Part shown: piece by piece, positions 5,949 through 24,453 of the stretch
Layout: each line of letters begins with the position of its first letter
How positions within the stretch are numbered: the first letter of the stretch is position 1
Source of the DNA: Vitrella brassicaformis CCMP3155
Taxonomy: Eukaryota; Protista; Chromerida
Reading direction: 5' to 3'
NCBI GenBank assembly: GCA_001179505.1
Contig: CDMY01000603.1
Coordinates: 248,001 to 312,000, forward strand
Length of the DNA stretch: 64,000 nt
Notes under the pieces: generated by a model
Databases searched by the model: none
Seen by the model: only the letters and a program-made list of their open reading frames with translations
What the model was told of the DNA's origin: nothing
Made by a program: the position numbers and the translations under genes

Positions 5949-6003
<55 letters not shown>

Positions 6004-6405: not shown

Positions 6406-9250
6406 ATGGCCACATTGAGTGGACAGGCGAGCGGCAGCAACGGCAATGCGAGTGCAGCAGGAGCACCCACCACCACCACCGAAGGTGCGCGAACGCCCGA
6501 TGCACAAGAGAAAGAGTCGGGGTGGCAGGCAGTGAGAAGGAGGCAGTTGCATTTGCACGGAAGAGAGAGCAAAGGACACCACAGCAGCCTTGCGAGTCGG
6601 CTGCAAAGATGGATGGTTCTCTCCATCGGTAACTTCTGTCTATGCGTATCTATCGGTCTGCTGTGCTGTCTGTCTGTGTCTGTGCAGGCCAGTCAGCGGC
6701 TGCGGCTGCGGCACCCGCACCCAGCAGCAACGGGCACGACGTCAAGACTTTGGCTCACACTGCTTCAGCGGGCCAAGCGGGACCGGAAGTACTCCCTCGC
6801 GACAGCCGTCCTCAAGACGGGCGACCCTCCCCTGCAGACGGCCGTTTTCCACGAGCTCGTCAACTACGTGCGCGACCCTCGGACGGCTCTACGGCCCGAG
6901 GTCACCGTTGAGATGACCTTTGCACTGAGGTGCCTCCAACTCGACTACGAGCGCTTCAGGCCCACCTTTGAGGCAACCGGTGAGAACCCTCTCGCTCAGC
7001 CGGTCAAGGCAGCGATCGCAGCGGTCTGGAAGGACGGGGAGTGACGGGGAGGGTGAGGGTGGGGGAGGAGGCTGACGTGGACGTGGATCTGGACGAGTTG
7101 ACCGATACGGCCTTGAACCAGATGGTACGCACCGCACGGACACAAGCGAAATGACTGACACATTACATACATTGGCAGGCTTGCCTGGACGTTGTGTTGT
7201 GTGTTTTCCCTCATCTAATCTGTGTGGCATCCATCCATCCATCAGGCGCGTGTGTTGGCCACGCTGACGGACCCTTCAGCGGACATGGCCCTTGTTCGTC
7301 GGGTTTTGCACGAGATGATGTGGCGTGGTGTGGACCCCGATTCACACGCTGTCCAGGCCATCGGGCAGCTGTGCGTGGCGAGTGAAGATCGCAGCACCAC
7401 TGAGATACTGGCCCGTCACATCGCCTACTGCCAGAAGCTCAACACCATATCGCTGACGGCCATGAACGCTCTCCCGACGGCCATCGCGGTAGAGCTGCTC
7501 GTCGAAGAGGTCAACAAGCTCCATAAGGAGATCCGCTACCACATGGGGGTGTCTCGTGAGATCACACACAGAAAGAAGGCGCTGAATCGCGGTAAGTGGG
7601 GGAGCGCAAGTGAATCGCTGGAACGTATAGCTCTGTGTCTCCATCCCTTCAGGCATTGCTGCCTCCATTTTATATTCGTCGGGCTGTTTATATCCATCTC
7701 TTTGCGCGTCAAAGCTGCCCAACACGACGAAAGACGTGGGAGACACAGACAGGATCGGCTGTTTACCAGGCGGGAGATTGCTGACGTGGACCTAAAGCAG
7801 CTGCGCAATTCATCAATAAATGAGCTGGTACATGCATGTGCGAGAGACACGATGAACGGATTAGCGAGGTTATCACATGTTAGTGTGTCTCTCTGTCTGT
7901 ATGCCTGTGCGCCATCCATCAGGCGCGAGTGTTGGCCACGCTGAAGGACCCCTCTCAGCGGACTATTTGCCCCGACACTGACAGTGAGAAGAGCGACGTC
8001 AGTGGTGGGCAGGAGGAGGGCGAAGATGAGATCGAGGAGGGCGAGATAGCTGATGACGGCGAGGGGGAGGGTGGGGACGAGGGGCCCGAGGGCGATGGTG
8101 GTGCCGAGGACGGTCGAGGCAATCCAGGTGTGGGCATGGTGCCTGATGAAGGCGGTGTCTCTACTGAGATGGTCTATCAGAACCACCCTGGTAAGTGGGC
8201 CGTCAAGAACAAGGAATATATGTGCACAGATGGTTGGGGATTGGCTCTTGCTTGATGCCTCTTTGGCTGTGGATGTGTGTGTGTGTGTAGATTGGTTGGA
8301 CGACTTTGCCGAGATAGCCTTGCACGTGGACGGCGTGTCGAGTGGTCGCGGCCGCATCATGCTGCCCAGAGACCTGCAGGGGCCGGCCACAGTGCAGTGA
8401 CGGACCTGCCACCGTATCAAGGTCAGCCAGCGAGGGAAGGACACACAACCGGACAAGACATCTGAGTGTCGTGTGCATGTGTGTTGTGTGGTGCAGGCGA
8501 GTTGCGGTCAGAAATATTCTACTGGGGGGAATTCGGAATGCAGCTCTCACTGGTCGGCCAAGCCACCACACCACATCACCGACACACACAGACGCTGTAT
8601 GTGTGTGTGTATGTGCGGGAGAGAGCCGTCGAAGAGTCGCATATTGGCGCCTACCTGCTGTTTTCGGGCAACCTGGGCAAGCTGGTCGCCCCATCAGTGC
8701 ACTCTTGCTTCTTGCTGGAGCTCAGCGTCATGGCCAATGACGCCCCAGGCAACACACGCATACTCCAGGTGCGCCAGTCACTGAGTCAGTGAGGGGCATA
8801 TGTGCGAGCAGCCGACCGGTCATTCGTTGGCTGCCGTTGCTGTGTGTGCAGACGTGCGACCTGCAAGATACGGACATCAAGAAGAGCGTGCGAATGAGAA
8901 ACCACGGAAGGAGCCACACACACACGTCTGTTTGTCTGTCTGTTTGTCTGTCTGTTTGTCTGTCTGTCAATGATCAGGGGGAGCGGCAAGGGCTGGGGCC
9001 GCCTCCTGACGACCGACTACGTGACGAGTGCGATGCAGGAGGCCAACTCGAGAATCTGCCTCTCCGAACCATATACGCCCTCGTGACATACTCACAGCCA
9101 CACCACATCGATGTCTCTGTCGTTGTCTGCTGCACATCAGTCCCCAGCTTGAGCCAGCGGGAGCTGATCACCCCGGTGCGAAGGTCGACCCCAGCAGCAC
9201 TCGCTTGGATGCCTGAACCAGACCCCACCCACATACCCACCAGTACCAGG
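6406..9250 (+). pseudogene. Degenerate copy A of a locally repeated, kinase-associated gene family
   Basis: Good ATG at 6406 and long coding-like exons, but an in-frame TGA at 7042-7044 with the acidic continuation (EEADVDVDLDELTD) in another frame. An exon start is duplicated (7240-7290 vs 7915-7960, second copy with an indel). Modules are shared with 9746-11620. Confidence 0.45.
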
Positions 9251-11055
9251 TGAGGGAGATCAAATCAGCACACATACACCCGCCCATTCGCATATGGGGG
9301 TGTGCGTCTGTGTGATGGATGTATCAGCACTGGCAGCACTTCTGCCGCCGCCGCAGCATCCCCCTCACTCACAGACCCCATGCACACCAACGGCGCATCG
9401 AGTAGTGGTGCAGCAGCAGACGGGGGAGGGTGGCGGTTGGGCGGCAGTGTGGTGGGCGGAGTGCGGTTCGAGACCATTGAGGAGGGTGATGAGGAGGATG
9501 CCTAGACGCCATCCATGTGCGGTGTGGTGCGTGTGTTGAGACTGGTTGGCTGTGGTTTGAGACTGGTTGGCTGTGGTTAGGTGTTGGTGGCAATGGGTGG
9601 TATGGTCGTTGTTCACAGAGAGATAGATAGGCGATCGGCAAGCGAGAGGTAGGCGCCAATCGAGATACGGCTAGTTGTGTCCTTTCCTTTCCTGTTTTGC
9701 GTCTCCGTGCCTCTCTGTCTAGGTATCCAACAGGCACAGAGACGCATGACAAGCTGCACAAGTAGGTGGAGCGCGGCAAACAGAAGGAGAAGGCCAAGAG
9801 ACAGTGACTGCCGTCGGAGCACAACGCCCTCAAGGTCATCAGATACATCAAAAGCGGCAGCGGGCCCCAGCGCGAGTGACCAGCTGCTGATGAGCAAGGC
9901 CATGGTCGCCATTAACACGCAGCTGCCCCGTAAGGACAGAAAGACCAAATTCAGCGAGACACTGGACCATTTGGTGCGTGAGGATATTGCTGCAAGTGGG
10001 CGCCCCAGCTTTGGCCTGAATTTTGTGTATCTCTCTTCAGCCATTGCTGCCTCCATTTTATATTCGTCAAGCTGCTTATATCCATCGCTTTGTGCGCCGA
10101 GTTCCACATCGGAAGGAGAAGCGTCCCTGAAGGGCTGTTGTATGGGCGCCCCGGCTTATAAAACACCTACACGATCACAAAGTGGGGAAGGCGGAAATAG
10201 AGAGAGGCAGAGACTGCAGGGAGAGACAGGGAGGCGGCCTTGGAACAAAGCATGTTTACCTGTTGGTTGTCTTCGTGCAGGTGGTCCACCGTGACATGAA
10301 GGGAGACAATTTGATGTTCGCAGCGGATGGCACTCTCAAGCTTTTTGATTTCGACTTCTGTTTTTTCATGGATGTCGAGGGCCACCCACATCGCAGACAA
10401 GACATTCTTCCGGGAACAAGAAGATATGCAATGGTGCACGTAGACGCTGTATATGTGTGTGTGTGCAGGAGAAATCCATCGACGAGGCGCATCTTGGCGC
10501 TTACCCGATGTTTTCGGAGACCACGGGCTGCCGTTGCTGTGTGTGCAGACATGCGACATGGGGGAGGTGGACATCAAAAAGTGCGTGCGAAAGAAACCAC
10601 GGAAGGAGCCACACACACACGTCTGTCTGTCTGTCTGTCTGTCAATGATCAGTGGGATCGCCTCCTGACGACCGACCGTGTGACGAGTGCGATGCAGGAG
10701 GCCAACTCGAGAATCTGCGTAACCACAATGATCTACGCCCTCGGAGGTACGTACGTACGTATGACATACTCACAGCCACACCACATTGGTGTCTCTGTCG
10801 TTGTCTGCTGCACATTAGTCCCCAGCTTGAGCCAGCGGGAGCTGATGACCCCGGTGCGAAGGTCGACCCCAGCAGCACTCGCATGGATGCCTCAACCAGA
10901 CACCAACCACATACCCACCAGTACCAGGTGAGGGAGACGAACACACACACACACACACACGCAGACATGCACCCACCAATCCACGTGCGTGTGTGATGTG
11001 TGTGATGCATCAGCAGCAGCTCTGCGGCCGCCGCCGCAACATCCGCCTCATCCCC
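8850..11055 (+). repeat. Direct repeat pair of ~500 bp: 8850-9360 and 10540-11055
   Basis: Near-identical exon and intron sequence, e.g. CGTGACGAGTGCGATGCAGGAGGCCAACTCGAGAATCTGC and GTCCCCAGCTTGAGCCAGCGGGAGCTGAT..CCCGGTGCGAAGGTCGACCCCAGCAGCACTCGC in both copies. Confidence 0.9.
9746..11055 (+). pseudogene. Degenerate copy B containing a protein-kinase catalytic-loop exon
   Basis: Exon ~10280-10433 reads VVHRDMKGDNLMFAADGTLKLFDFDFC..PGTRRYA (HRD-K-N, DFD and GT-x-x-Y motifs), but no Gly-loop or VAIK exon was found. EKSIDEAHLGAY (frame from 10469) and LPLLCVQTCD (frame from 10528) are out of frame with no intron between them. Confidence 0.5.
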
Positions 11056-11189
11056 AGACACCTTGTACACAAACGGCACATTGAGCAGTGGCCCAGCACC
11101 AGATGAGGGCACTGGACATACACGATCTTTCCCGCACTCCATTCTTCCCGCCCAGGGCCAGCTACAGATCGCCCATCTGTCTGTGTATC

Positions 11190-11620
11190 TCTCTTCAGCC
11201 ATTGCTGCAGCGCTGCCTCCATTTTATATTCGTCAAGCTGCTTATCTCGCGAGACCCGGCACTCCCATTGCGCAAAAGGCATGGAGAGATGGATGAGGGT
11301 GCAGTTGCAGTTGCAGCTTGACAAGAAGCACACCACGAATGCCGACTCAAAACACGTGGGTCAACGCGATTTGTCTGTATCTGAGTGTACAGTATATATG
11401 TGTTTCCCCAGGTATGCGCATGATGCTGCCTTCACGGACCTGACACCATACAGAGGTGAGTCAGGGAGGGAGGAGGGAGGAAACTGAGTGTCGTGCGTAT
11501 GTGTTTGTGTATTGTGTGGTGCAGGCGAGTTGCGCTCGGAGACATTCTACTGGGGCGAGTTCGGCATGCAACTCTCACTGGTCAGCCAAGCCACCACACG
11601 GCATCACCGACACACGCAGA
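11190..11620 (+). repeat. Third partial copy (C) of modules from the 6.4-11.6 kb cluster
   Basis: CCATTGCTGC..CCTCCATTTTATATTCGTC at ~11200 matches ~7655 and ~10040; 11435-11620 matches 8400-8590 (GGCGAGTTGCG..TTCTACTGGGG..CTCTCACTGGTC). Confidence 0.75.
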
Positions 11621-13120
11621 CAAGGGTGGGGTGGGGGTGGGGTGCAAGGGGACCGTGATGTAAGCACTCAAGGTGCGTGTGGACGGACTGTCCATTGCAG
11701 CCATGTATACAAGCATATAGCTTCCCTCATGAGCTCCGACTGACTGACTGCAAACGCTCAACGTCGCCAACTTGCACACGCACCAATGCAATGGAGCATC
11801 CGCGCGTGCATCCACTAGATAAAATGTCAGAACGCCCTCAAGATCTTGAGTCTTGACTGCCTCGACAGACAGAGACACGCCAGAACCGTCCAACCAACCG
11901 ACCACTTCGCAGGCAGGCATCGAGAGACAAAGGGAGCGAGCAGGCGAGCGACAACACACACGAGAAGTGGAAAGAAGAGAAGAGAAGAGAAGTTCAGCCA
12001 GCCACACACCCAGCCACCCAGTCAGAGCCGACATGCAGCGCAGCCACGCACTTACGCTTCCTTACGCACGCACTTACGCATCCCCGCCCCCACCCTGGCT
12101 CCCGAATGCACTCACCCACCCAGTCATCATCATCACCCAATACAACAAAATACATATCGATATGTCAATTGGACAGCCTCACACGTCAGTCAACTGTTGA
12201 GGGTCCTAGCAGCTTGCTGCGCGCGACGGCGGCAGCATATCGCGTGCAAGGAAGGGACGAAAAACAGCAGGGGCGGGGAGGGGGCTGGTTGGTTATGCAT
12301 GATGTTGCCCGCACGCAGGCAGGGATGCAGGGATACAGACACACCAGCAAGGCGGGCGGGTGTGAATATAAAATCCAGCTGCAGGCAGGAACGAAAAACG
12401 ATACTCTGTCTGTCTGTCTGTCTTTTCTTTTGTGAGTTCTCGTGCGCCGCCGTTGGCACACGGAGGGGAGGGGGGGAGGGAGGAGGAACACTACACACAC
12501 AAGTTGGCCTGATGAGGACGTGCGCGCAGGCACAGACACAAAAGGGCCTCCCTCGGATAAAAGAGAGCCTCTCCCAGGCGCAGCAAGGGCCGGCCGCAAA
12601 GAGCGGTCAATCGGCCGTCAGAGGATAGAATGCTCTCTGCTCACACACTCAGACACACACGTACGTGCGCACGCACCCACAAGGCCGCGCTAATTCGTGA
12701 GTGAGGGAGAGGGGTCTGCCCGCTCAGTTAGTTGTCCGTCCACACACAGCTACTACCAATCCACCCAGACGCGCACACACGACACACGGCACACAGCACC
12801 CCCAGTCTCCCTCTCTCTTGCACACACAAACAGCACCTCACAGGCAGCTAGCCATTCGGCTCATGGCACTCAGTCAGACAGCCAGACTTCCAACATTGGA
12901 CACGAAAAAGACCGAATCAGTAACTGGATGGATGGATGGATGGATGGTGGGCGGGAGGGAGGGAGGGAGGGAGGGAGGGGGGAAGGAAAAGACACACACG
13001 CAAAACCTCCCCGCCCGCCGGCCCTCCGCCGAAAAGTGAATTGACTTACAAGACAGACTTACACTCGTACCGTACAAACGAACAAAGATCAATCACTCAT
13101 ATTCTATGCGCGTCGCTCAC

Positions 13121-16100
13121 TCATTCATATCGGTCAAAATAGCCGATGACCGGCGCCTCCATGGATGCGTCAGAGGGGTGGCCTGCAGCACACACAGGTC
13201 AGGTCACGTCACAGCACACACACATGAGTGAGTGATTTCAATATGCACAGATCTCCTTCCTCCCCACCGGTGACCCACCACCTACCGTGGTGAGCAATGA
13301 TGCCGTCAGGTCGAATAAGGCAGAATGCGGCAGGCTGTCCGGCGTTGAAGGGCGAGAGGTTGAACTTGTACCTCTGCAGCACCTCCCCCTCGACGTCCCA
13401 CGCCAGCTGGAGATCAACGCTGCACTCCTGCGGCTCAAACGACGCCTTGAACTTCTTCTTGATCGCATTCAGAATGGTGCTCATCCGACCAACGCCCTCA
13501 ACCTACACTCAACTCACACACAATGCGCAGCGCACGTGGTGGCGACGTGACGACAAGCATGCATCCCGCCCATCCCGCCATGTGTTCGTTCCTCGTTAAT
13601 TACCATCGGCACGAGGGTGGCCCTGCCGGTGCTGAAGACCAGCAGCACTTGCAGCTCCTGGCCCGGCCGCTGGTGTTCGGGCCTCTGGGGGTCGCTGCCG
13701 TTGCTCGTCGTGGGGGACGACTGCGCATGGTGGGTGCTCGTGTGGCTGTTGGCCCCACCGCCCCCTGCCGCAGCTGTCCTCGGGCGAGAGGGCGTGATGG
13801 GCGAGGAGGGCTGCGTCTTGGGGGTGGCGTCGTCGCGGCAGGCCTCGTAGTACTTGGTCTGCAGCTTCACGCCCAGCTTGAGCAGGTCGTGCAACACACC
13901 GGACACCTCTATCTCTGCAGCCAGGCACACACATACACACACAAAGGGACGTGTGTGTTTGGCTGGTCTGCAATGTGTGCTGTGTGTGGTGGTGGTGGTG
14001 GTGTTTCGCGCACCGTCCTGCTCGATGGGGTCTGGGAGGCCGATCGGCGGGATGTAGCAGGTGCCGCCAAACCATGAGCGCTTGGGCCGGCTGGCCGACG
14101 AGAGGGAGGACGTGCCGAGCTCCTCGCCCTTGGCCGGCACACGCAGCGCCAGCAGCAGGGTGTGCGACGGACGGGCTATCGCCTGACAAGACAACACACG
14201 AACGATGGATGGATGCGCAGATGCGATGACTCTGTGCGGCGTACCTGGTGCAGCCTGACGAATCTGATCTGGTTGTCGTCGACCAGCGCGAGCTTGGCGT
14301 CAGGAGCCCGTGACCCCGGTGGCACGCTGCCCTTGATCTGCTCCCGACCAACACACCGCCTGAACACAACGGGGAGAGAGAGAGAGGGACAAGCAATTGT
14401 CACCATTGAGTGTGCAGATGAGCTGCTATGCTGCTGTGTTGTGCTTGCCTGTGTATTGGGTACTGCCTGTCCTTCTGCAGTGCGACCAGTGACGGCCCCA
14501 GCCACTGGGAGTTGGCCGTCGGCAGGATGGTGCGCATGTTCCACAGCAGCCCCCCACCGTTCATCGCATCCATGTAGCTCTCCAGCGACGTCACTGCGCC
14601 ATACATACCCCATAGACACACACACGGACAGACAGACAGACAGACAGACATGACACACAGGTGGATGGATGGACGCACTGCGGTGCCGGTGGGTCGTTCG
14701 CTGGCTCACTCACTCTTTCTCCGTTGATGCCGTTCGGTGACGTATGTGTCGAGCAGCGACCAGTCGGCCTGGTTCGCCACGACCGTTGCAAGCTTCCACG
14801 CCAGGTTAGAGGCATCCTGACGGACGGAAGAGATATGTACGATGGATTCATTGTGTTGTGGGTGCGTGTGTGGGTAGGGCCATCCACCTCACTCACCTGT
14901 ATGCCTGTGTTGATGCCCTCGTCGAAGAATGGCGAGTGCATCTGTGCGGCGTCTCCGCACATGAACACACGTCCCCATGAGTAGGTGGGCTGGAATATGT
15001 CGCACATCGGCACACCTGCAAGACACACAAGGCACATGGGGTCCCTCCCTCCCTCCCTCTCACACACTCACATGTGGCCCAGTCGACCTCCTCAATCACG
15101 CTGCCAGGTAACGCCTGCACACACACACACACACACACAACACACACCCATCCCTTGGCTTGTGCGTCNNNNNNNNNNNNNNNNNNNNNNNNNNNNNNNN
15201 NNNNNNNNNNNNNNNNNNNNNNNNNNNNNNNNNNNNNNNNNNNNNNNNNNNNNNNNNNNNNNNNNNNNNNNNNNNNNNNNNNNNNNNNNNNNNNNNNNNN
15301 NNNNNNNNNNNNNNNNNNNNNNNNNNNNNNNNNNNNNNNNNNNNNNNNNNNNNNNNNNNNNNNNNNNNNNNNNNNNNNNNNNNNNNNNNNNNNNNNNNNN
15401 NNNNNNNNNNNNNNNNNNNNNNNNNNNNNNNNNNNNNNNNNNNNNNNNNNNNNNNNNNNNNNNNNNNNGCATTGGCAATAGAGTGCAGCTCCCCCCTCGT
15501 AGGGCTCAGGTGATGGTAGCACACGATGTCCATCAGAAAGGAGGTCTCCGTAAGCAGGGGTCTGATGCGGCGGCCGGCAACGACCCGCCACTTGTTGCCG
15601 CCGCCCAGCGGCACACACGACACGACCTCTCGGTTCCTGCCCAGCAGCAGCTGCGCGCTCTTCTTGTTGGCGGGCACCGGCCACTGCGCGCGGATGTCGG
15701 CCACGAGGAACTCCATCTCACCGGGGGTGCCGCTGGGCTGGTTAGGGTGGTGCACTCGGGGAGGCGCGAATTTCTGGTGAGTGGGTGGCATTGCATTGCA
15801 CGAGAGAGAGAGCAAGAGAAGACAGACCAGAATGTGCGTCACGGCGTTGACTGACTGACCTTCTTGATGGTCGAGTCGACTCCATCGCACCCCACAAGGA
15901 ACACGCCGGTGAAGGCGCATTTCTTGGCGTTGAACTTGTTGCGGAAGATGTCGCGGGTGCCTTTGGGCTGTGAGGGGTCGGGTGGGGGTCGCGGCCGGAC
16001 GTTGACGGTGATGGTCTCGTCGGGATGCTCCCCGATGTGGATGCTGTCGATCTCGACGTTGCGCTTGATGCACTGCTGGTAGCCCAGACGATTGATGCGG

Positions 16101-16720
16101 TCGATCAGAATGCGCTCCACTAAGGACTGGTCAACCACCTGCAATACACACAATGTCAACACACACACACACACACACAGATACAGCGAAAGGGGGGGTG
16201 GGGGATGGCGTGTGACCACTTTCTTGTGTGTTGTTTGTGTGTTGGTGTGCTCTGCTCACCACAGGCTCTGCGTGTTGGGAAGTGGATCCCTTGAAGGTGC
16301 GCTCCGTCACCACTTTGCCGTTGGCGACCAGCCGCTCTGCCGTCAGCATATGGCTGCACGCCAGCACCTGATCCACCATGCCAATACCTGTACTCAACCA
16401 AACAGACAGCGCACACAACACCAACAAAGCACAGACACAGAGAGAAAGCTTTGAGTGTCCGCCGTCTCTGCCCGTCCGTCCACTGTCGTACGTTCGAGTG
16501 TGTCGAGCGTGGCGCTGTGCAGACATATGGTTCTCCCAAACATCTCAGCACAGTCGGGATTGCCCTTGTGCGGCCCGGACGACTTGTCGAGCAGCACAAA
16601 GCTGACGCCTCTCCTCGCCAGCTCCAAAGCCAGCACAAGGCCACTGCAGGAGCCGCCGACGATGATGACATCTGTGGCGGTCAGGGTGGGCAGATCAGGC
16701 ACGCCGTCTGCCGCCGGCAT
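13121..16720 (-). CDS. FAD-dependent monooxygenase (FAD_binding_3, phenol-hydroxylase-like, with C-terminal thioredoxin-like domain); interrupted by an assembly gap
   Basis: N-terminal DVIIVGGSCSGLVLALELARRGV, internal LVGCDG, GRVFMCGDAAQMHSPFFDEGINTGIQ|DASNLAWKLA, C-terminal GSRAPDA and LIRPDG motifs. The last exon probably ends GYFDRYE-TGA at 13121. Confidence 0.9.
15169..15468. other. Assembly gap (300 N placeholder) inside the monooxygenase gene
   Basis: Run of N. Confidence 1.
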
Positions 16721-16864
16721 TCTCGGCCGCTCAGGATAGAAGGAGCTCGGCAGCTTTGCGTCACTGCCCAGTCAGTCACCGCGCCAGATCCGTGATCAGT
16801 CTGGCGGTTTCACGCACACCCTAGCAGATATGCTCTGCCAGCTTAGCCTCCGACTCGGCGAAGA

Positions 16865-18385
16865 ATGGCATCATTTTTCGTCCACGGAAGGCAGATTTGC
16901 CTTCTCCATTCCCCCCAGCACTTCCTGCTAACGCTGCGTCACCTCTTCCAGACCGTCAAGGAGCGGGCAGTCATCTCGGCCCTCTATGTCGGCACGGGAG
17001 ACCCGGAGTCGGCCGTCATCCGAGATCTGCTCTCGGCATGCAAGGCGCGCGGCAGGGCATTGCAAGTGGACGTCCTGCTCGACTGCCTCAGGGGCACACG
17101 CAAGGACAAGACCACCGAGGCGTCGTCCGTCAACAGGCTGCTGCCCGTGTTGTGGAGCGGGCAGACCAGGGCCCGTGTGGCGCTCTTCCACACGCCGCTT
17201 CTCTCGGGGCCTCTGAAGCGAGTGCTGCCCGCGCGCATCAACGAGGTGCTTGGCACGCTGCACGTCAAGGTGTTCATTGCGGACGACACGGCGGTGCTCA
17301 CGGGAGCCAATCTCAGCACCTCTTACCTCACCGACAGGCAGGACAGGTACGTCGTCATCCGCGACGCGTCGGTGGCCGACTACCTGCACCAGATCGTGAG
17401 CAGCGTATCGGCGTGCAGCTATCAGCTCGAGGACAACGGCGACCTGCTGCTGCCCTCGTCTGTTCCCGACCCATCCCAGCGGCCAGATGACTTCGCGGCC
17501 TATCTCGGCGAGCGGCTGCAGCCGTATCAAGCAGTTTCCACGACAGGAGGAAGACATGGCCTGCCTCACTGGCGGACAGAGGATATACCGCCCCATTGCA
17601 GGAGGGCAGACCTCACTGGGCCGAAGACAGCTGCATTGCAGTCGTCCCTCGCCCGTGTGTCGTTTCGGCTGCAAGCTGGCTTCATCTCGCCACCCATCAT
17701 GGACGAGCTCACGCTTCTGGAGGAGGTCCTCGCCAACGCCGCTGAGAGCGGGCAGCGAGTGGTGCTGGCGTCGGGCTACCTCAACCCCCCGACGCAGCTA
17801 CGGGAGGCCCTGCAGAAGTTCGCTGCGACGAGGGCAGAGAAGGGGAGGGAGGGAGAGGGGGGGAAGAGCAGTTCATCTGCTACTGCTGCTCTCAGCTTGG
17901 TGACGGCGGCGCCTGAGGCCAACAGCTTCCACAACTCTCGGGGTCTGTCGTTCTGGATCCCGGCAGCCTACGCATCAGCGGGCGCCGACCTTCTGGCGTC
18001 GCTTCCCGCAGGCAGTGTGACGATGCGGGAGTACTGCCGGCCTGGGTGGACGTTCCACTCGAAGGGCATCTGGCTGTATCCCCCAGACAGCGACAAGACC
18101 TTCCCCCGGTCGTCTGACCGGCTGCCGTGGGCCACTGTGTGCGGCAGCAGCAACTTCAGCCAGCGGTCGTCGTTTCGCGACCTGGAGCTGTCGTGCTTCA
18201 TTGAGACGGGCGAAGAGGAGCTCAGGAAGGACATGGGCAAGGAGGTGGAGGCCCTGATGGGTGGTGATGGTGATAGTGATAGTGGTGGGTTTAGTCGGGG
18301 TGTGGGCGTGCGGGAGATGAGGGGGAGGTGCCCTGGGTGGCTGAGGTGGCTGGTTGCCAAGAGCAGGGTCGGGACGCTGCTGTGA
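16865..18385 (+). CDS. PGS1: CDP-diacylglycerol--glycerol-3-phosphate 3-phosphatidyltransferase (PLD-type phosphatidylglycerophosphate synthase), intronless
   Basis: Single 506-aa ORF with LYVGTG, DCLRGTR, LFHTP, first HxK motif (HVKVFIADD..GANLS.SYLTDRQDRY), SGYLN, PEANSF, second motif TFHSKGIWL and GSSNFSQRS..RDLE. Confidence 0.93.
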   Translation: MASFFVHGRQICLLHSPQHFLLTLRHLFQTVKERAVISALYVGTGDPESAVIRDLLSACKARGRALQVDVLLDCLRGTRKDKTTEASSVNRLLPVLWSGQTRARVALFHTPLLSGPLKRVLPARINEVLGTLHVKVFIADDTAVLTGANLSTSYLTDRQDRYVVIRDASVADYLHQIVSSVSACSYQLEDNGDLLLPSSVPDPSQRPDDFAAYLGERLQPYQAVSTTGGRHGLPHWRTEDIPPHCRRADLTGPKTAALQSSLARVSFRLQAGFISPPIMDELTLLEEVLANAAESGQRVVLASGYLNPPTQLREALQKFAATRAEKGREGEGGKSSSSATAALSLVTAAPEANSFHNSRGLSFWIPAAYASAGADLLASLPAGSVTMREYCRPGWTFHSKGIWLYPPDSDKTFPRSSDRLPWATVCGSSNFSQRSSFRDLELSCFIETGEEELRKDMGKEVEALMGGDGDSDSGGFSRGVGVREMRGRCPGWLRWLVAKSRVGTLL

Positions 18386-18700
18386 GCACAGCACGTGACG
18401 GCGGATGGACAAACGTGTCCTGTGCGTGTGTGTTTATGTAATGGGACGTTTGTGCAATATATACGCCTGACGCACGTAAACCCTACGGGTGTCTGTCTGT
18501 CCAGAACAAACTGTTTGTCCTGACGTATGGACTCACTCGTACAAACCGATCAATGACAGACACCACACAACACAACACGAGAAAAAACTGACTGACTACG
18601 TCCCAACCAAAAATAGTCTGACGTACACTCACTCAGCTGGCAATGGTCTGTCTCGCTGTACTGTGACTAATACGCTCTACATAGCGGCATTCGCGTTAGC

Positions 18701-21700
18701 TTATTCTGTGCCTTTCCAGTGGAGCCGTGCCAGCACTGCAGTGCCCTTGGCCAGCTGATCGTAGGCCTCTTTAGCACGAGAGGCGGGGAAGGTCTGCACG
18801 GGCAGGAAGGAGCAGGTCGACGGCGACAGCTCGGCCAGGACACGCAGCGCTTCGTCGAGCCGACGATCCTTTGTCCACCGCCCACGCAGCGATGGCGGGA
18901 TCTCGCTCACCTGGGAAAACTGCACACAACACAACACACGCAATCAACGAATGCCATGCACGCACCAACCGTATGTATCGTCTGGTCTGGTTGTTGTTGG
19001 TGTGCCCTGCCCGTGCTTCCACACCGACCTTGATTTGTATGTGCGATCGGTGCAGCCGCAGCGAGCCGAGGTCCAGCTCAGCAAAGCCGGCGAAGCCCTT
19101 GGAGTACCACGACCCCACCACCACCCGCCCGTTGTTGCGCGTCACCCTCAGCGCAGCGTCCAGCGCTGTCGGCCGCCCACTCACCTCTATCACACAGTCG
19201 AAGGGGCTGGGTGGGTCGTGGGCAGAAGAAGGGGCCAGCACCGCAGACGCACCGGCCTCTCTCGCGAGACGGCGCCTTTGCTCGGAGGGGTCGATGGCCG
19301 TCACGTGCCAGCGTTGGCGAGCCAGCAGATAGGTCACCAGCAGGCCTATCAGGCCCTGGCCAAACACCGCCACCTGCTCACCTGCAAGACATCCACACAC
19401 ACACCCATATAGATGCCNNNNNNNNNNNNNNNNNNNNNNNNNNNNNNNNNNNNNNNNNNNNNNNNNNNNNNNNNNNNNNNNNNNNNNNNNNNNNNNNNNN
19501 NNNNNNNNNNNNNNNNNNNNNNNNNNNNNNNNNNNNNNNNNNNNNNNNNNNNNNNNNNNNNNNNNNNNNNNNNNNNNNNNNNNNNNNNNNNNNNNNNNNN
19601 NNNNNNNNNNNNNNNNNNNNNNNNNNNNNNNNNNNNNNNNNNNNNNNNNNNNNNNNNNNNNNNNNNNNNNNNNNNNNNNNNNNNNNNNNNNNNNNNNNNN
19701 NNNNNNNNNNNNNNNNNGGGCAGGAAGGAGCAGGTCGACGGCGACAGCTCGGCCAGGACACGCAGCGCTTCGTCGAGCCGACGATCCTTTGTCCACCGCC
19801 CACGCAGCGATGGCGGGATCTCGCTCACCTGGGAAAACTGCACACAACACAACACACGCAATCAACGAATGCACCCACCCACCGTATCGTCTGGCCTGGC
19901 TGTTGTTGGTGTGCCCTGCCCGTGCCGTGCTTCCACACCTACCTTGACTTGTATGTGCGATCGGTGCAGCCGCAGCGAGCCGAGGTCCAGCTCAGCAAAG
20001 CCGGCGAAGCCCTTGGAGTACCACGACCCCACCACCACCCGCCCGTTGTTGCGCGTCACCCTCAGCGCAGCGTCCAGCGCTGTCGGCCGCCCACTCACCT
20101 CTATCACACAGTCGAAGGGGCTGGGTGGGTCGTGGGCAGAAGAAGGGGCCAGCACCGCAGACGCACCGGCCTCTCTGGCGAGACGGCGCCTTTGCTCGGA
20201 GGGGTCGATGGCCGTCACGTGCCAGCGTTGGCGAGCCAGCAGATAGGTCACCAGCAGGCCTATCAGGCCCTGGCCAAACACCGCCACCTGCTCACCTGCA
20301 AGACATCCACACACACACCCATATAGATGCCAGGACCACCCTCTAGTCTCAATAGATCTCTCTCCTCATTGCCCACCCACCTGGCACTGGATTGGCATCC
20401 TGCAGTAGCGAGAGTGCGGTCTCCATTGCCGGCAGGAAGATGGCGTCGTCCACGGGCACGTCAGCGGGCAGGCGTGTGCACGACGACAGCGGCACGATCG
20501 CCCTCTCCTCGTGAGAGTGAAACGCAAAGACCTTCTGGCCCAGCCACGACAAGCGGTCCACGCCAGAGCCACACCTGACGCATTTGCCGGCGAGGGAGTA
20601 GCCGTATGTGAGTGGATATCTGAGCGGTGTGGCCGTCATGCCCTCGATGGATGTGTCCAGCGGCTCGCCGTCGATGAAGTCGCCCTGGTAGACCTTGAGC
20701 TCCGTCCCGCTGCTGATCAACGAGTAGGCCGACTCCACCTCCACCTGCAGGCAGGCAGCCATCGCATCCACGCACCAAATGTGTGGTGGTGGAGTGCAAT
20801 GTGTTAGTGAGTTATGGGTTTGTGGGTGGCGGGCGGGGCTTACGTACGTGTCCTGGCGGCACTTTGATGGCTTGGGGCCGGTCTCTGATCTCTACTCGCG
20901 AGGGGCCGCTGAAGACCACCTGGCGGCTGGGAAAGGCAGCCGCCACATCTGAGTACACACACACACACACACACACATGGGTTCACAGGCGTGTGAGCGT
21001 CTGTCTATCCATCACATACAGACATATCGGCGGGCAGTGTGCCGAGAATGTCGACGTTTTTGACCTTCAGTGTGGAGTGTTTGTCGGTGTGGTGCTTGAC
21101 CCATGCTGGCAGGTCCCAGTGGGGCAGCAGCTGGCAGCTCCTGAGCGCACCCATGGCCAGGAACGACATCAGACACTGCCACATGTACTGATGGTCCGCG
21201 CACGGCACCGACCACTCCGACGCACCTAAACGAATCACACACACACCCACATGGCTGTCCATCCATCCATCCATCCAGGTGACCTCACCCTGCATCATGA
21301 TTTGCCCTTTTCGCGATTCGATGGCCCTGAGCAGCTTGGAGGGGTCGGTCGATTGGCCCTCTCTCCTCAGGTGCTCGTGGTACAGACTCACCACCTGCCG
21401 GTCGGTCGGCAGCGCCCCGCCGCCGAAGAACGGCGGGTCAAATGTCGTCCTGCCGGCGTAGGTAATCGGCATGTACAAGAGCGCCCCTGCACACACACAC
21501 ACACACACTCGTGCATATGTGTAGACAGCCGTCTGTGGCAGGGCAGGGCAGGGTCCCTACACACCTGGTGCGATCCTAGTGAGGTGGTTGATGAGGACGT
21601 CCTGGTCCATCAGGTCGGCGAAGGAGCAGCCCAAGACGACGTCGAAGCCGTGCTGCCCATCAGCCGTGTCCAGAAGGTCGCCCTCCACCAGCACCAGGTA

Positions 21701-23072
21701 TATACCGCCGCCGCCCCGGTCGGCCTTGCGGTAGACGCGCTCCCGAGGATGGAAGCCGAAGCTCTCATCGACCTCCTCGAACCCCATCAGCTCGGTGGCA
21801 CTCTCGCGGTTGGCCTGACAGACAGACACAGCCAGAGAGCATAGCATGCCAGTGTCTGTCGCTTGCAGGCTTGTGTGTGGTCTCTCTCGTTGTCTGTCTG
21901 ACCTGCATGACGGCGCGTGAGGTGTCGATGGCCACGTAGACGAGTGCGTCGCCCCGGCCCTTCCACTGATGCCCCTCCCATAGGCCCAGCACCCTCACCA
22001 GCATGCCCAGCCTCCCCGCCCCCACATCCAGCACCCTCACGCCGCAATCCCTCGGCTCCTTCTCGCGGAACCTCGCCACGAAGGCCTCCCACGTGTCTTC
22101 ATTGAAGGCGTGGCAGTCGATGGCCTTTTTGGCGGAGAGGTAAGCGAGCGGGTCGAACTGGAAGGTGGATTGGGGCGGGGCGCACTTGATGAGTGACGCT
22201 AGGGACTGCTCGAGGGTGGATGGAGAGGTGGGGAGAGGGGCCAGGGACACGCCTGAAACAACAGGACGATGTGCGTTTGTCTGTCTGTCCGAGTGGGTGG
22301 TTACCTTTGATGGCATGTGAGATGGCCTGCACGCTGCTGTCGATGACTTCAGGGTCATCAATCACCACCAGCTCCTTCTCCCCCCCTCCTAGCTCCTTCC
22401 ACGCGTCCCGCAGCCTCTCATACTGAGGCCCCCTGCCGCCCTCGCCGATAAACGCCTCACCCCCCACCATTGGCACGCCCCCCCTCTCCGGCATCACAAT
22501 GCGCGACACCATCGAAGATGGCAAACACCGTGAGTAGAAGAGCATGTGCCCTGGGGAGGTCCACCGCAGGAGGTCCCTGATCCACCTCGGCGTGGCGCCT
22601 TCGCTCGCCATGTGCTGCCACCCTGTCGGCGTAGTGCTTTCCTTCCGGCCGTCCCTGTCGTCTGTCTGCCCGCTGACTCGCGCAGTCTCCTTGTTGAGGA
22701 GGTATGCCGTGAGCTCCTTCTCGATCGCCGCCCAGCCGCCCCTCTCCTTGCTGTCGAGACACCGCCGCACAATGGCCTTCACCTCAGCCGACGCGATCAG
22801 GTCCACATTGAAGGCGATCGGTGGCAGGAGGGCGGCAGCTGATTGGGGGGTGTCCAGCGGGCCCTCAAATGAGGCGGACGTGGCGAGTGGGTCGGGGCCG
22901 TCGGAGACGGTGATGGTGAGCGACGAGAGGGGCTCCGGAGGGCTCTGTCGGTCTGCTGGCGGAAGACTCAGATATGCGGAACGGACTCTCTCCCACAGAT
23001 AGCGTGACAACTGCAGCCAGCAACAGAGGAGGAAACGCATTCATGGAGGGGAGGGAATGCAATCGCGCCTGT

Positions 23073-23103
<31 letters not shown>

Positions 23104-24309
23104 GCCTTTGCTCGCTGACTGACCATTTCCAGCGTCCAGTTCTCCCCCTTCATGGCTTCGATCTCCTCCAAGTTGCGGTAGGCCAGCCCCCCCACCGCCT
23201 CACCCAGCAAAGCCTGACACATCCCAATATCGACCAGGAAGTTCTCGGGCTCGCGCAGCCGGGGGCCCTTGAAGGTCATGTCCACCAGCAGCGTCGCGCC
23301 GTGCAGGTCCTCCGCCCCGTCGAGCCTCCGGGCTATCATGCACCGGTCCCTCACGGTGACAGAGAAGTGGCCGAGGTGTGCGGGGGGCGGGGCGGGGTCG
23401 GTGGGGCCCTCGAAGGAGCATGACGCGATGTCCGACTCGTGAACGATGATCTTGAGGCGTTTCTTGTTTTTCGGGGGGGATGGGGGAGTTTCTGCAGCTC
23501 CGTCTTCCAGGCGTTCCGGGCGAAAGTTCACTGCCATGTCTTCCCAGAGCTTGAAGGCGATCCACTCGATGGTCGTGTTGGCTCCCTGGGTCCAAGGGGA
23601 TGTGTCGAGGTTCTGTACACATGAACATGCAAACAACGGACAGAGATGACCCTACACTGTACATGTAGCACACGTGTCGCTGACCCACCTGATTTTCGAA
23701 GGGCTTCAGCGCGTCAATCAATGCCTTTGCAAGGTCCCTTTCGTCGAGATGATGGTAGAGCCACGCCTCCACCAGAATCGTGGCGCCGTGCATTCTCTGC
23801 GCCGGGCCGAATGACTTGCCGCGGAAAGAATGCGCCAGCATGGCCGTCTCACACACTCGGGCCGGGTCTCGCTCCTCATCCCATGGGTAAGCGGGCGAAT
23901 GTGCGAAGCCGTAAAAGGAATAAGAGTCACGCAGGCCGAGGCGCATGTCGTCCACCGGATCACCTGCCTCCACCTTCGACAGCAGGTACTTGCGGAAGGC
24001 GGGCAGATTGCCAGATAACTCTGTCGCGTGCTTGCACCACTCCTTGATGCGGCAGGCCTCTTTGAGCGCTGAGCTCTTCACCAGATGACCATCTGCTCGC
24101 AGCGTGGAGGACGTCACGGACGCGGTAAGCAGGTTAACCGCCCCGTGTAAGAAGCCGTAGAAGTCGCCCTGCAAGGCGTCGCCGTGAAGGGGCCTTCTGA
24201 TGGTCAGGGTGTAGGTGCTGAAGGCGCGGGAGAGTCCCCTGGACGCCACACATCTCGGACGAACCAGCGCCGTCATTCCGTGAGTCGGCGATGAGTCAAT
24301 CGGCTCCAT
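18701..24309 (-). CDS. Multidomain fusion enzyme (~1290 aa): 3x PTPS-like T-fold + HAD-like + class I SAM methyltransferase + MDR-family NAD-dependent dehydrogenase
   Basis: Exons 24309-23689, 23612-23124, 23010-22305, 22252-21903, 21814-21565, 21486-21289, 21225-21016, 20948-20848, 20744-20381, 20295-19943, and a last exon from 19837 (completed in the duplicate copy as 18919-18701). All phases match, total 3861 nt. Motifs: AHSFRGKSFGPAQRMHGAT, FSVTVRD, YLSAKKAID, VLDVGAG, SLISSGTE, VFGQGLIG, VVGSWY. Confidence 0.85.
18800..20331. other. Near-identical ~615 bp blocks (18800-19417 and 19718-20331) flanking a 300-N gap (19418-19717); probable uncollapsed haplotypes
   Basis: Both flanks contain the same two dehydrogenase exon segments. 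Differences are intronic indels/SNPs, one synonymous change (GCG/GCC) and one I/V change. The duplication starts and ends exactly at the gap edges. Confidence 0.85.
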
Positions 24310-24415
24310 TGCCGAGAGATTTGCCTCTGTTTTGCTACCACGAGGCGGGACGAACACATTCCGGACAGGTCTAAGGCAGATCTGCGCGTTTTGCCGCCTG
24401 CGGGGTTCCAAACCC

Positions 24416-24423
24416 TGCGAGCT
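24416..24423. promoter_or_regulatory. Candidate promoter motif TGCGAGCT/AGCTCGCA (other copies at 5045, 5073, 35703, 55296, 58497)
   Basis: Perfect 8-mer found in five separate head-to-head intergenic regions. Confidence 0.45.
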
Positions 24424-24453
24424 CAGACGTGCAGTAGGGAAGTGGCCGTCCCG

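What the first reader, a model, noticed from the sequence alone, without database searches (positions are those of the whole stretch)
18701..24309. A prokaryotic pterin-type gene cluster apparently fused into one spliced eukaryotic polyprotein
Seen: 11 exons splice in frame (3861 nt, ~1290 aa) and carry, in order, three PTPS-like T-folds, a HAD-like segment, a SAM methyltransferase (YLSAKKAID, VLDVGAG, SFADL, LYMPITYAG, GASEW) and an MDR dehydrogenase (SLISSGTE, YPLTYGYS, KVFAFHSH, AMETALSL, GEQVAVFGQGLIG, VVGSWY, HRSHI, GRWTKDRR). Knowledge, from memory: the PTPS signature FSVTVRD..AHSFRG..FGPAQR.HGAT is the actinobacterial SCO6650-type PTPS homologue rather than the eukaryotic BH4 enzyme. 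It, this methyltransferase type and this dehydrogenase type occur as separate adjacent genes in a prokaryotic cluster that often also has GTP cyclohydrolase II, RibD-like and glycosyltransferase genes, with product unknown to me. Inference: horizontal acquisition of an operon followed by fusion and intron gain, giving a channelling megaenzyme for an unknown modified pterin or pigment in a protist. It is also a Rosetta-stone link for the prokaryotic pathway. The weakest link is the methyltransferase-dehydrogenase junction (~21020-20918): an unspliced read-through stops at 21005, but the dehydrogenase has no in-frame ATG of its own and two GT-AG pairings (21015/20949 and 21019/20919) keep the frame.
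Basis: partly seen in the sequence, partly recalled or inferred. Interest (0 to 1): 0.93.

Follow-up and report, generated by a model that had tools for sequence, protein, structure and literature searches.

The report
Bacterial operon genes fused in alga
One spliced gene of the alga Vitrella brassicaformis joins three enzymes (a PTPS-like protein, a methyltransferase and a dehydrogenase) that many bacteria encode as neighbouring genes of one uncharacterised operon, so the fusion ties those enzymes to a single pathway whose product is unknown.

Summary
The finding is real. Window 24309-18701 (minus strand) is one 11-exon gene of Vitrella brassicaformis. RNA contigs confirm eight of its ten introns; the other two could not be scored. 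One 1,707-nt RNA contig runs from exon 3 to exon 9, across the methyltransferase-dehydrogenase boundary.

The N gap is flanked by a 615-bp duplicate of exons 10-11. The copy after the gap matches a second copy of the gene on another contig (554/558), so the scaffold is a mosaic. The public model CEM25797.1 (1418 aa) therefore carries a false 143-aa repeat. The true protein is about 1282-1286 aa.

At the weak junction the acceptor at 20948 is right. The second copy uses a GT donor after 21028. The window has A there, so it probably uses the in-frame donor 12 nt downstream.

The order MDR dehydrogenase, SCO6650-type PTPS, GT4, methyltransferase, RibD_C, GTP cyclohydrolase II is conserved, and all three eukaryotic modules match those genes.

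Only two T-folds are verified, and the HAD-like segment is degenerate. The same or a related architecture occurs in Chromera, other algae, diatoms and a diplonemid. The product is unknown, and the operon context points to the GTP cyclohydrolase II (riboflavin-type) branch. The scan also noted the second copy on another contig.

The parts
23689..24309 (-). Exon 1 (621 nt). ATG at 24309; the public model starts at the second Met, 11 codons in. Encodes the N-terminal ~150 aa of uncertain fold and the first half of T-fold 2, with AHSFRG..FGPAQR.HGAT.
   Evidence: X4 RNA contig 23689-24396 joined to exon 2. 3d7j match, E 5.9e-8.
23124..23612 (-). Exon 2 (489 nt): second half of T-fold 2 and most of T-fold 3.
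   Evidence: RNA joints 23612|23689 and 23010|23124. 3d7j match, E 6.9e-14. Pfam PTPS.
22305..23010 (-). Exon 3 (706 nt): end of T-fold 3 (to about 22858), then the degenerate HAD-like middle region (about 22824-22305).
   Evidence: RNA joint 22252|22305. HAD tests inconclusive.
21903..22252 (-). Exon 4 (350 nt): N-terminal part of the methyltransferase module with motif I (VLDVGAG).
   Evidence: RNA joints. hhalign to the bacterial methyltransferase.
21565..21814 (-). Exon 5 (250 nt): methyltransferase module (GCSFADL).
   Evidence: RNA joint 21814|21903. The intron 5 joint was dropped by the tool because of a (GT)n repeat; the RNA contig length fits the splice.
21289..21486 (-). Exon 6 (198 nt): methyltransferase module (LYMPITYAG).
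   Evidence: RNA joint 21225|21289. Family search.
21016..21225 (-). Exon 7: C-terminal part of the methyltransferase module. The RNA and the second copy end it at 21028 (GCCG|GT). The window has A at 21027, so the in-frame GT donor after 21016 is the likely one for this copy, adding MSVY.
20848..20948 (-). Exon 8 (101 nt): linker and start of the MDR dehydrogenase (VVFSGPSRVEIRD).
   Evidence: P0001 and P0068 both use acceptor 20948. RNA joint 20744|20848, plus depth and length accounting.
20381..20744 (-). Exon 9 (364 nt): MDR N-terminal (GroES-like) domain (SLISSGTE, YGYS); no zinc ligands.
19943..20295 (-). Exon 10, copy before the gap (353 nt): MDR Rossmann domain (GQGLIG).
   Evidence: Pfam ADH_zinc_N, E 5.7e-12. 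RNA joints 20295|20381 and 19837|19943.
19718..19837 (-). Exon 11, copy before the gap, cut off by the N run.
   Evidence: The RNA contig reads straight through it to 19718.
19418..19717 (.). Assembly gap (300 N, a conventional length) between two overlapping copies of the same sequence.
18805..19417 (-). Duplicate of 20331-19718: end of intron 9, exon 10 (19381-19029), intron 10 and the start of exon 11. It derives from the second gene copy.
   Evidence: 98% identical to the copy before the gap. 554/558 identical to contig CDMY01000856.1, against 538/558 for the copy before the gap.
18701..18919 (-). Exon 11, complete copy (219 nt) ending in stop TAA at 18701-18703: C-terminus of the MDR.

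Best explanation
Shown:
- This is a nuclear, intron-containing gene of Vitrella brassicaformis, transcribed and spliced into one mRNA for a protein of about 1282-1286 aa.
- Its order is: an N-terminal region of uncertain fold, two SCO6650/PTPS-IV-type T-folds, a degenerate HAD-like spacer, a class I SAM methyltransferase of a family Pfam does not model, and a zinc-less BchC-like MDR dehydrogenase.
- Only the first of the two T-folds keeps the AHSFRG/FGPAQR/HGAT/HES residue set.
- The spacer has Asn where the HAD nucleophile Asp should be.
- The PTPS-like, methyltransferase and MDR modules are homologues of three separate genes of one widespread bacterial operon: MDR, PTPS-IV, GT4 glycosyltransferase, methyltransferase, RibD_C reductase, GTP cyclohydrolase II. 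A CDP-alcohol phosphatidyltransferase and, in some loci, a creatininase-family protein are also present.

Inferred:
- The three activities act in succession on one small molecule.
- The T-fold part binds a 2-amino-4-oxopyrimidine or pterin-like head group derived from GTP through the GTP cyclohydrolase II / pyrimidine reductase branch.
- The methyltransferase adds a methyl group from SAM.
- The MDR oxidises or reduces a side-chain alcohol or carbonyl with NAD(P).
- The genes were most probably acquired from bacteria once, early in an algal lineage, and then fused. In relatives such as diatoms an intact pyrimidine-nucleotidase-type HAD phosphatase takes the N-terminal place.

The product is unknown.
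For: One gene, one mRNA:
- X4 contigs skip eight introns at the predicted borders. A 1,707-nt contig spans exons 3-9 and an 848-nt contig spans exons 9-11.
- The public models CEM25797.1 and CEM35485.1 and Chromera Cvel_2635 have the same continuous reading frame.

Eukaryotic setting:
- The gene has spliceosomal introns and lies next to a PLD-type gene.
- A relative sits next to a chlorophyll a/b-binding protein gene.

Module identities:
- T-folds: 3d7j at E 6.9e-14 and 5.9e-8.
- Bacterial T-fold HMM: 6.8e-27 and 8.5e-21.
- Foldseek TM 0.83 to 3d7j.
- Bacterial MDR HMM: 6.4e-50.
- Methyltransferase profile against the bacterial cluster methyltransferase: probability 99.1%, E 1e-18, 264 columns. 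Probability is 1.1% or less against the six other cluster families.
- Atlas look-alikes are all class I methyltransferases.

Operon:
- MDR lies directly upstream of PTPS-IV in about 72 of 80 loci.
- In the 41 loci of 18 kb or more: MDR 41, T-fold 41, GT4 37, RibD_C 37, methyltransferase 36, CDP-alcohol transferase 28, GCH II 14.
- A creatininase-family protein is present in 11 loci.

Literature:
- FGPAQ is the PTPS-IV signature and GCH II lies in its neighbourhood (PMC5445326).

Fusion constancy:
- Only 67 of 1.84 billion representative proteins match the methyltransferase C-terminal half.
- Every one that extends past it continues into the MDR.
Against: - No assay, and no metabolite is known.
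- The N-terminal ~140 aa and the HAD-like spacer could not be assigned.
- The methyltransferase has no significant Pfam or PDB sequence match.
- The module order differs from the operon order.
- The diatom-type relatives lack the T-fold, so the T-fold may not be needed for the methyltransferase/MDR chemistry.
- The MDR tree is unrooted, and eukaryotes are separated from all sampled bacteria by a long branch. Donor and direction are therefore open.
- RNA evidence for the exon 7/8 junction comes from the second gene copy, not from the window's copy.
Confidence: 0.72

Rival explanations
1. The fusion is a gene-model or assembly artefact, and the PTPS-like, methyltransferase and dehydrogenase parts are separate genes.
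For: The locus is badly assembled. It has an N gap, duplicated exons and a mosaic of two copies. The public model contains a false repeat. The tool dropped the RNA joints for introns 5 and 7.
Against: One RNA contig spans exons 3-9 and its length fits only spliced exons. No stop or free-standing start lies between the modules. Chromera, metagenomic algae with uninterrupted 1,442-1,863-aa ORFs, diatoms and others have the same continuous methyltransferase-MDR arrangement.
Confidence: 0.03
2. It is a pterin enzyme in the classical sense. It takes dihydroneopterin triphosphate from GTP cyclohydrolase I, as PTPS does, and makes a modified biopterin-like compound or pigment.
For: The T-fold/PTPS homology. 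T-fold enzymes generally bind pterins or purines (established knowledge). One route from a ribitylaminopyrimidine to a dihydropterin ring by side-chain oxidation and ring closure is chemically conceivable (inference).
Against: The zinc/catalytic motif CxxxxxHGH of PTPS-II is absent; the sequence reads HGAT (PMC5041015). The bacterial cluster carries GTP cyclohydrolase II, a RibD_C-type pyrimidine reductase and a creatininase-family protein, not GTP cyclohydrolase I. Diatom relatives carry a pyrimidine-5'-nucleotidase-type HAD.
Confidence: 0.12
3. The T-folds here are a non-catalytic scaffold or ligand sensor. The chemistry is done by the methyltransferase-MDR pair alone, on a substrate unrelated to pterins or pyrimidines.
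For: Most eukaryotic relatives (diatoms, an ochrophyte) have HAD-methyltransferase-MDR with no T-fold. T-fold 3 and the N-terminal region have lost the signature residues.
Against: In bacteria the MDR and PTPS-IV genes are the most constant pair of the cluster, 41/41. T-fold 2 keeps the full PTPS-IV signature. T-fold-bearing forms are kept in several lineages.
Confidence: 0.15
4. The modules reached eukaryotes separately, or are ancient and vertically inherited, and were joined later. There was no operon transfer.
For: The module order differs from the operon. The HAD module is not in the operon. GT4, RibD_C and GCH II were not found in the window. The tree is unrooted with a long inter-domain branch.
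Against: Three rare families co-occur in one operon in bacteria and in one polypeptide in eukaryotes. All eukaryotic MDR modules form one clan, SH-aLRT 100. The eukaryotic distribution is patchy and mostly algal.
Confidence: 0.2

Closest known systems
SCO6650 of Streptomyces coelicolor (PDB 3d7j), the PTPS-IV subfamily of COG0720
   Same: T-fold. The AHSFRG..FGPAQR..HGAT signature in T-fold 2. 37% identity and TM 0.83 to the model. FGPAQ is the published PTPS-IV signature (PMC5445326).
   Different: The bacterial protein has a single ~135-aa domain that forms homo-oligomers. Here two (perhaps three) T-folds are in one chain, only one keeps the signature, and they are fused to other enzymes. 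The function of PTPS-IV itself is unpublished (PMC5041015 mentions F420 synthesis as unpublished work).
Bacterial orphan cluster: MDR, PTPS-IV, GT4, methyltransferase, RibD_C, GTP cyclohydrolase II
   Same: Three of its genes are homologous over their whole length to the three eukaryotic modules.
   Different: In bacteria they are separate genes in a different order. GT4, RibD_C, GCH II, the CDP-alcohol transferase and the creatininase-family protein are not part of the eukaryotic protein. The eukaryotic HAD-type module is not in the cluster.
Chromera velia Cvel_2635 (UniRef A0A0G4F2G1, 1332 aa) and unnamed metagenomic algal proteins (P0021, P0027, P0062)
   Same: Same architecture: T-folds, spacer, methyltransferase, MDR. 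They are sister to the Vitrella module in the MDR tree.
   Different: Only 26-31% identity in the T-fold region. P0021 keeps a recognisable HAD (E 2.6e-7). Some are intron-less ORFs.
Diatom/ochrophyte HAD-methyltransferase-MDR proteins (e.g. Seminavis robusta CAB9499137.1, Chrysoparadoxa CAM9237441.1)
   Same: Homologous methyltransferase-MDR pair in the same order.
   Different: No T-fold. An intact HAD with DVDNTLY / SNSP / DDS motifs of the pyrimidine-5'-nucleotidase type is at the N-terminus, often after a signal-like peptide.
Eukaryotic 6-pyruvoyltetrahydropterin synthase (PTPS-II, BH4 pathway)
   Same: T-fold, Pfam PF01242.
   Different: The CxxxxxHGH motif is absent. Similarity is much weaker than to SCO6650.
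BchC-type zinc-less MDR dehydrogenases
   Same: Best NCBIfam look-alike for the MDR of both the bacterial and the eukaryotic proteins. SGTE and GY[ES] stand in place of the zinc ligands.
   Different: Scores are far below the BchC cut-off (40-59 bits against 291). It is a separate MDR family.

Membership tests
PTPS-IV (SCO6650-type, COG0720) | FGPAQ signature | tested here: met
   T-fold 2 reads AHSFRGKSFGPAQRMHGAT. T-fold 3 lacks it. Signature as given in PMC5445326.
PTPS-IV (SCO6650-type, COG0720) | T-fold structure, closest to SCO6650 | tested here: met
   AF2 model residues 139-409 with pLDDT mostly 65-94. Foldseek top hit 3d7j, TM 0.83, E 4.8e-10.
PTPS-IV (SCO6650-type, COG0720) | Genomic association with GTP cyclohydrolase II | not testable with these tools
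   Met for the bacterial relatives. It has no meaning for a eukaryotic fusion, and the rest of the Vitrella genome could not be searched.
PTPS-II (BH4 pathway enzyme) | CxxxxxHGH zinc/catalytic motif | tested here: not met
   HGAT in both T-folds, and no Cys at the required spacing. Motif from PMC5041015.
Class I SAM-dependent methyltransferase | Glycine-rich motif I (D/E-x-G-x-G) after a beta strand | tested here: met
   VLDVGAG. G48, A49 and G50 are invariant and D46 nearly invariant in 22 relatives.
Class I SAM-dependent methyltransferase | Significant match to a curated methyltransferase model or solved structure | tested here: not met
   No Pfam hit in the module. PDB profile hits have E of 0.29 or worse. 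Only the bacterial homologue hits Methyltransf_23, at E 2e-4 and below cut-off. Atlas look-alikes are all methyltransferases, scores 0.96-0.97.
MDR (medium-chain dehydrogenase/reductase) | Rossmann domain ADH_zinc_N above the Pfam threshold, with GxGxxG | tested here: met
   46 bits on exon 10 alone and 81 bits on P0068, against a cut-off of 31.8. GQGLIG is present.
MDR (medium-chain dehydrogenase/reductase) | Catalytic zinc ligands (Cys, His, Cys/Glu) | tested here: not met
   SSGTE and YGYS occupy the ligand positions. The same is true in the bacterial cluster MDRs.
HAD phosphatase | Motif I DxDx[T/V] with a nucleophile Asp | tested here: not met
   The window has FNVDLIAS where relatives have DVDNTLY.
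HAD phosphatase | Rossmannoid HAD fold, or a significant profile match | tested here: inconclusive
   HMM E 0.68. hhalign probability 5.6%. AF2 pLDDT 62 with a beta-alpha pattern. No Foldseek hit below E 0.1, with HADs at TM 0.34-0.37. The motif remnants are collinear.

The most novel reading that the evidence does not exclude
The bacterial operon and its algal fusion make a so-far undescribed GTP-derived cofactor, signal or pigment. One example would be a pterin or lumazine-like ring formed without GTP cyclohydrolase I. In that route the MDR oxidises the ribityl chain of a GTP cyclohydrolase II / RibD_C product, the ring closes on the T-fold, and methylation follows. The compound would be shared by many soil and freshwater bacteria, chromerids, diatoms and other algae.
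Probability: 0.12. Interest if true: 0.85.

Novelty: new variant of a known kind. Interest (0 to 1): 0.6.

Why it matters
PTPS-IV and its gene cluster are a long-noted orphan of bacterial genomics, and their function has never been published. A natural fusion of three of its genes is independent evidence that these three enzymes work together. The fusion is conserved in chromerids and other algae, and a related HAD-methyltransferase-MDR form is widespread in diatoms.

The fusion also shows that the pathway, or part of it, exists in ecologically important eukaryotic algae. It offers single-polypeptide targets for expression and assay. In practical terms, the work corrects a public gene model that carries a false 143-aa repeat.

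Tried and rejected
1. My first reading of the exon 7/8 junction was 21020|20919, taken from the 'side 72' figure. It was wrong. P0001, the contig-length and depth accounting, and the second copy's DNA give 21028|20948.
2. Word-indexed protein searches with exon 2 and with part of exon 1 found nothing. The length filter and word requirement exclude both the long fusions and the divergent bacterial proteins.
3. Pfam on single exons gave nothing for exons 3-7.
4. PDB sequence searches with exons 3, 4 and 9 and with a methyltransferase profile gave no significant hit.
5. Greedy longest-ORF gene calling in the GC-rich bacterial loci picked antisense ORFs. I replaced it with codon-position GC filtering and HMM scans of all ORFs.
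6. Literature searches for SCO6650, for the cluster's gene set, for Vitrella with PTPS and for COG0720 since 2017 found no functional study. PMC3262898 is not held.
7. AF2 of the N-terminal 135 aa gave pLDDT below 50, so a third T-fold is neither shown nor excluded.
8. Bacterial contamination is rejected. The gene has spliced introns confirmed in RNA and eukaryotic neighbours.

Full report
**Gene structure**

On the minus strand of 24309-18701 I rebuilt the gene from splice-site tags and reading frames. There are eleven exons with GT-AG introns of 52-113 nt. The quoted motifs are all there. Unspliced read-through of exon 7 ends at a stop at 21005-21007.

**The assembly gap**

The 300-N run (19418-19717) is one of two identical conventional gaps in the window. 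Its two sides are the same sequence. 20331-19718 aligns with 19417-18805 at about 98% identity, and the differences are concentrated in intron 10. The window therefore holds exon 10 twice, and the start of exon 11 twice.

A second copy of the gene lies on a 15-kb contig of the same assembly (CDMY01000856.1, locus L081). It is about 94% identical to the window over exons 2-9. It is 554/558 identical to the copy after the gap, against 538/558 for the copy before the gap. The scaffold is therefore a mosaic of two gene copies joined across the gap, not a tandem duplication.

The X4 RNA contig that covers exons 9-11 reads straight through exon 11 to 19718. The public model CEM25797.1 (P0068, 1418 aa) instead splices out of exon 11 at about 19766 into the second exon 10, and so repeats 143 aa. 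With one copy the protein is 1282 aa (donor 21028) or 1286 aa (donor 21016).

L081 also has a 300-N gap inside exon 11. Its sequence downstream of the stop differs from the window: a VPS9-domain gene rather than a PLD-type gene. Whether the two copies are alleles or paralogues is not settled.

**Transcription and splicing**

Four public runs were laid on 19718-24450.

- **Runs X1-X3:** these behave as DNA, with contigs that contain the introns.
- **Run X4:** this is spliced RNA. Its contigs skip introns 1, 2, 3, 4, 6, 8, 9 and 10 at exactly the predicted borders.
- **Introns 5 and 7:** the tool dropped two joints that lie in (GT)n repeats, and these are the two missing introns.
- **X4 record 26:** this 1,707-nt contig runs from 22840 in exon 3 into exon 9. 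That places the methyltransferase and the dehydrogenase on one RNA contig.

**The exon 7/8 junction**

I first misread the accounting of record 26 as favouring 21020|20919. The protein of the second copy (P0001 = CEM35485.1) reads LPAD|VAAAF. That corresponds to exon 7 ending at 21028 and exon 8 starting at 20948. These lengths (198 + 101 nt) fit both the contig length and the depth bins.

In L081 the donor is GCCG|GTATGG. The window has GCCG|ATATGT, so intron position +1 is A. The window copy has therefore lost that donor. The GT 12 nt further on (after 21016) keeps the frame and is the one used in CEM25797.1 (LPADMSVYVAAAF). All plausible solutions keep the dehydrogenase in frame. RNA evidence for this junction exists only for the second copy.

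**Modules**

- **T-folds.** Exons 1 and 2 match SCO6650 (3d7j) at E 5.9e-8 and 6.9e-14. An HMM built from 58 bacterial SCO6650-like proteins finds two full domains, aa 151-277 (6.8e-27) and 290-421 (8.5e-21). The AlphaFold model of aa 12-441 is confident for these two domains, and Foldseek ranks 3d7j first (TM 0.83), followed by QueD and PTPS. Bimodular T-fold proteins also match across both domains. T-fold 2 keeps AHSFRG, FGPAQR, HGAT and HES. T-fold 3 keeps only HGAT. FGPAQ is the published signature of the PTPS-IV subfamily (PMC5445326). The PTPS-II motif CxxxxxHGH is absent.
- **N-terminal ~140 aa.** This region has only a sub-threshold, collinear match (aa 46-83) and pLDDT below 50. A third T-fold is unproven.
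- **Middle region (aa ~433-610).** It aligns collinearly with the intact HAD domains of relatives: TGWQH against TGYSH, YSRCLP against ASNSP, VVIDDP against LLDDS. It has FNVDL where they have DVDNTLY. No test is significant: HMM E 0.68, hhalign probability 5.6%, model pLDDT 62, no Foldseek hit. I read it as a degenerate and probably inactive HAD remnant. A T-fold-bearing relative (P0021) still matches the HAD profile at 2.6e-7.
- **Methyltransferase (aa ~640-935).** It has motif I (VLDVGAG) but no Pfam or PDB sequence match. Its protein-atlas look-alikes are all class I SAM methyltransferases of about 300 aa.
- **MDR (aa ~950-1282).** It passes ADH_zinc_N, lacks the zinc ligands, and looks most like BchC among curated families, far below that family's cut-off.

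**Relatives**

An exhaustive HMMER search of 1.84 billion representative proteins with the methyltransferase C-terminal half found only 67 proteins. All that extend beyond the methyltransferase continue into the MDR.

| Architecture | Where found |
|---|---|
| T-folds, spacer, methyltransferase, MDR | Vitrella, Chromera velia Cvel_2635, three metagenomic organisms (one next to a chlorophyll a/b-binding protein gene) |
| Intact pyrimidine-nucleotidase-type HAD, methyltransferase, MDR | The diatom Seminavis, Chrysoparadoxa, an MMETSP transcript, many unnamed marine contigs |
| Other N-terminus, methyltransferase, MDR | The diplonemid Namystynia |

No stand-alone or prokaryotic methyltransferase reached E 1e-3 with the single sequence.

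**The bacterial cluster**

A scan of one genome per bacterial species with the AHSFRG-FGPAQR stretch returned 80 loci. They come from Acetobacteraceae, Streptomyces, Saccharopolyspora, Burkholderiales, Bradyrhizobium, Methylocystis, Competibacteraceae, Polyangiaceae, Isosphaeraceae and others.

tblastn with my spliced protein hit the T-fold gene. In about 72 loci it also hit a gene immediately upstream on the same strand with the MDR module, at 28-35% identity and E down to 1e-33.

After codon-position GC gene calling, clustering and Pfam/NCBIfam annotation, the conserved order is as follows:

1. CDP-alcohol phosphatidyltransferase (opposite strand)
2. MDR
3. PTPS-IV
4. GT4 glycosyltransferase
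5. A 290-aa methyltransferase
6. RibD_C-type pyrimidine reductase
7. GTP cyclohydrolase II

A creatininase-family protein is present in 11 loci.

Counts in the 41 loci with at least 18 kb:

| Gene family | Loci (of 41) |
|---|---|
| MDR | 41 |
| T-fold | 41 |
| GT4 | 37 |
| RibD_C | 37 |
| Methyltransferase | 36 |
| CDP-alcohol transferase | 28 |
| GCH II | 14 |

A profile of 40 eukaryotic methyltransferase modules aligns with the profile of the 28 bacterial methyltransferases over 264 columns, at probability 99.1% and E 1e-18. Against the six other cluster families the probability is 1.1% or less.

All three modules have homologues inside one operon.

**Evolution**

In a maximum-likelihood tree of 24 eukaryotic MDR modules and 46 bacterial cluster MDRs, the eukaryotes form one clan (SH-aLRT 100). 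Within it, the T-fold-bearing proteins fall in one subclade with Vitrella next to Chromera.

The tree has no outgroup and the inter-domain branch is long. A single origin of the eukaryotic module is supported, but neither the donor nor the direction is established. The broad bacterial distribution against a patchy, mostly algal eukaryotic one makes bacterial origin the economical reading (inference). The T-fold duplication predates the divergence of the T-fold-bearing lineages, since domains align one to one.

**Function**

Nothing was assayed, and I found no paper on the eukaryotic fusion or on the product of the bacterial cluster. PMC5041015 mentions unpublished work linking PTPS-IV to F420 synthesis. 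PMC5445326 records GTP cyclohydrolase II in the PTPS-IV neighbourhood.

The cluster's GCH II, RibD_C reductase (closest to the archaeal 2,5-diamino-6-ribosylamino-pyrimidinone phosphate reductase) and creatininase-family protein resemble the early archaeal-type riboflavin/F420 steps (established knowledge of ArfA, ArfB and ArfC).

I therefore infer the following:

1. The substrate is a ribosyl- or ribitylaminopyrimidine phosphate, or a ring-closed derivative.
2. It is bound by the T-fold.
3. It is methylated by the methyltransferase.
4. It is oxidised or reduced on its side chain by the MDR.
5. In diatom-type proteins it is first dephosphorylated by the HAD domain.

Both should be assayed.

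**Verdict**

This is a real, expressed, conserved multi-enzyme fusion, and it links three genes of an orphan bacterial operon. The details that needed correction are the gap duplication, the junction, the number of verified T-folds and the status of the HAD-like segment. The gene is already in public databases as an unnamed product with a faulty model, and its architecture is shared with other algae.

The scan's other notes describe the same stretch (s1-221630, s1-201782, s1-221855) and the second copy on another contig (s1-248670).

Noticed in passing
window 19418-19717 and 18805-20331; public protein CEM25797.1: The public gene model repeats 143 aa (EQVAVFG...RRLDEALR) because it splices across the N gap from the first exon 11 into the second exon 10. 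RNA reads through that supposed donor.
   Followed up: yes
window 21027 versus L081 about 2204: A G/A difference at intron position +1 between the two gene copies. The second copy has the canonical GT donor and the window has AT. An in-frame GT 12 nt downstream could rescue splicing and add four residues.
   Followed up: partly
L081 (CDMY01000856.1) 3529-3828 and 4057 onward: The second copy also has a 300-N gap inside exon 11. Beyond about 230 nt after the stop it shares nothing with the window; a VPS9-domain gene follows instead of the PLD-type gene. Alleles, paralogues or a chimeric contig: not decided.
   Followed up: partly
window 16865-18385 (+): An uninterrupted 506-aa ORF with two PLD-like domains (PLDc_2 and the PLD active-site motif), convergent with the fusion gene. 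It resembles PLD-type phosphatidyltransferases. The bacterial cluster carries a CDP-alcohol phosphatidyltransferase; this is probably coincidence.
   Followed up: partly
window 24454 onward (+): A divergently transcribed gene starts about 145 bp from the fusion gene's ATG. It has a Rossmann GGSGLLG motif and looks like an NAD-dependent sugar epimerase/reductase. No Pfam hit on its first exon.
   Followed up: partly
window 24350-24260 (-): A short upstream ORF (ATG at about 24350, out of frame) lies in the transcribed 5' leader and overlaps the main start codon.
   Followed up: no
window 20950-20985, 21490-21515, 23075-23110 (-): (GT)n microsatellites in introns 7 and 5 and a (CAGG)n run in intron 2. 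These made read laying drop the joints of introns 5 and 7.
   Followed up: partly
bacterial loci, e.g. three GT4 ORFs of 649-826 aa among L001-L080: In a few bacteria the GT4 glycosyltransferase and the methyltransferase of the cluster are fused in one ORF. The protein atlas also shows a 655-aa GT4 cluster whose structure contains the methyltransferase fold.
   Followed up: partly
window 15169-15468: A second 300-N assembly gap in the window.
   Followed up: no
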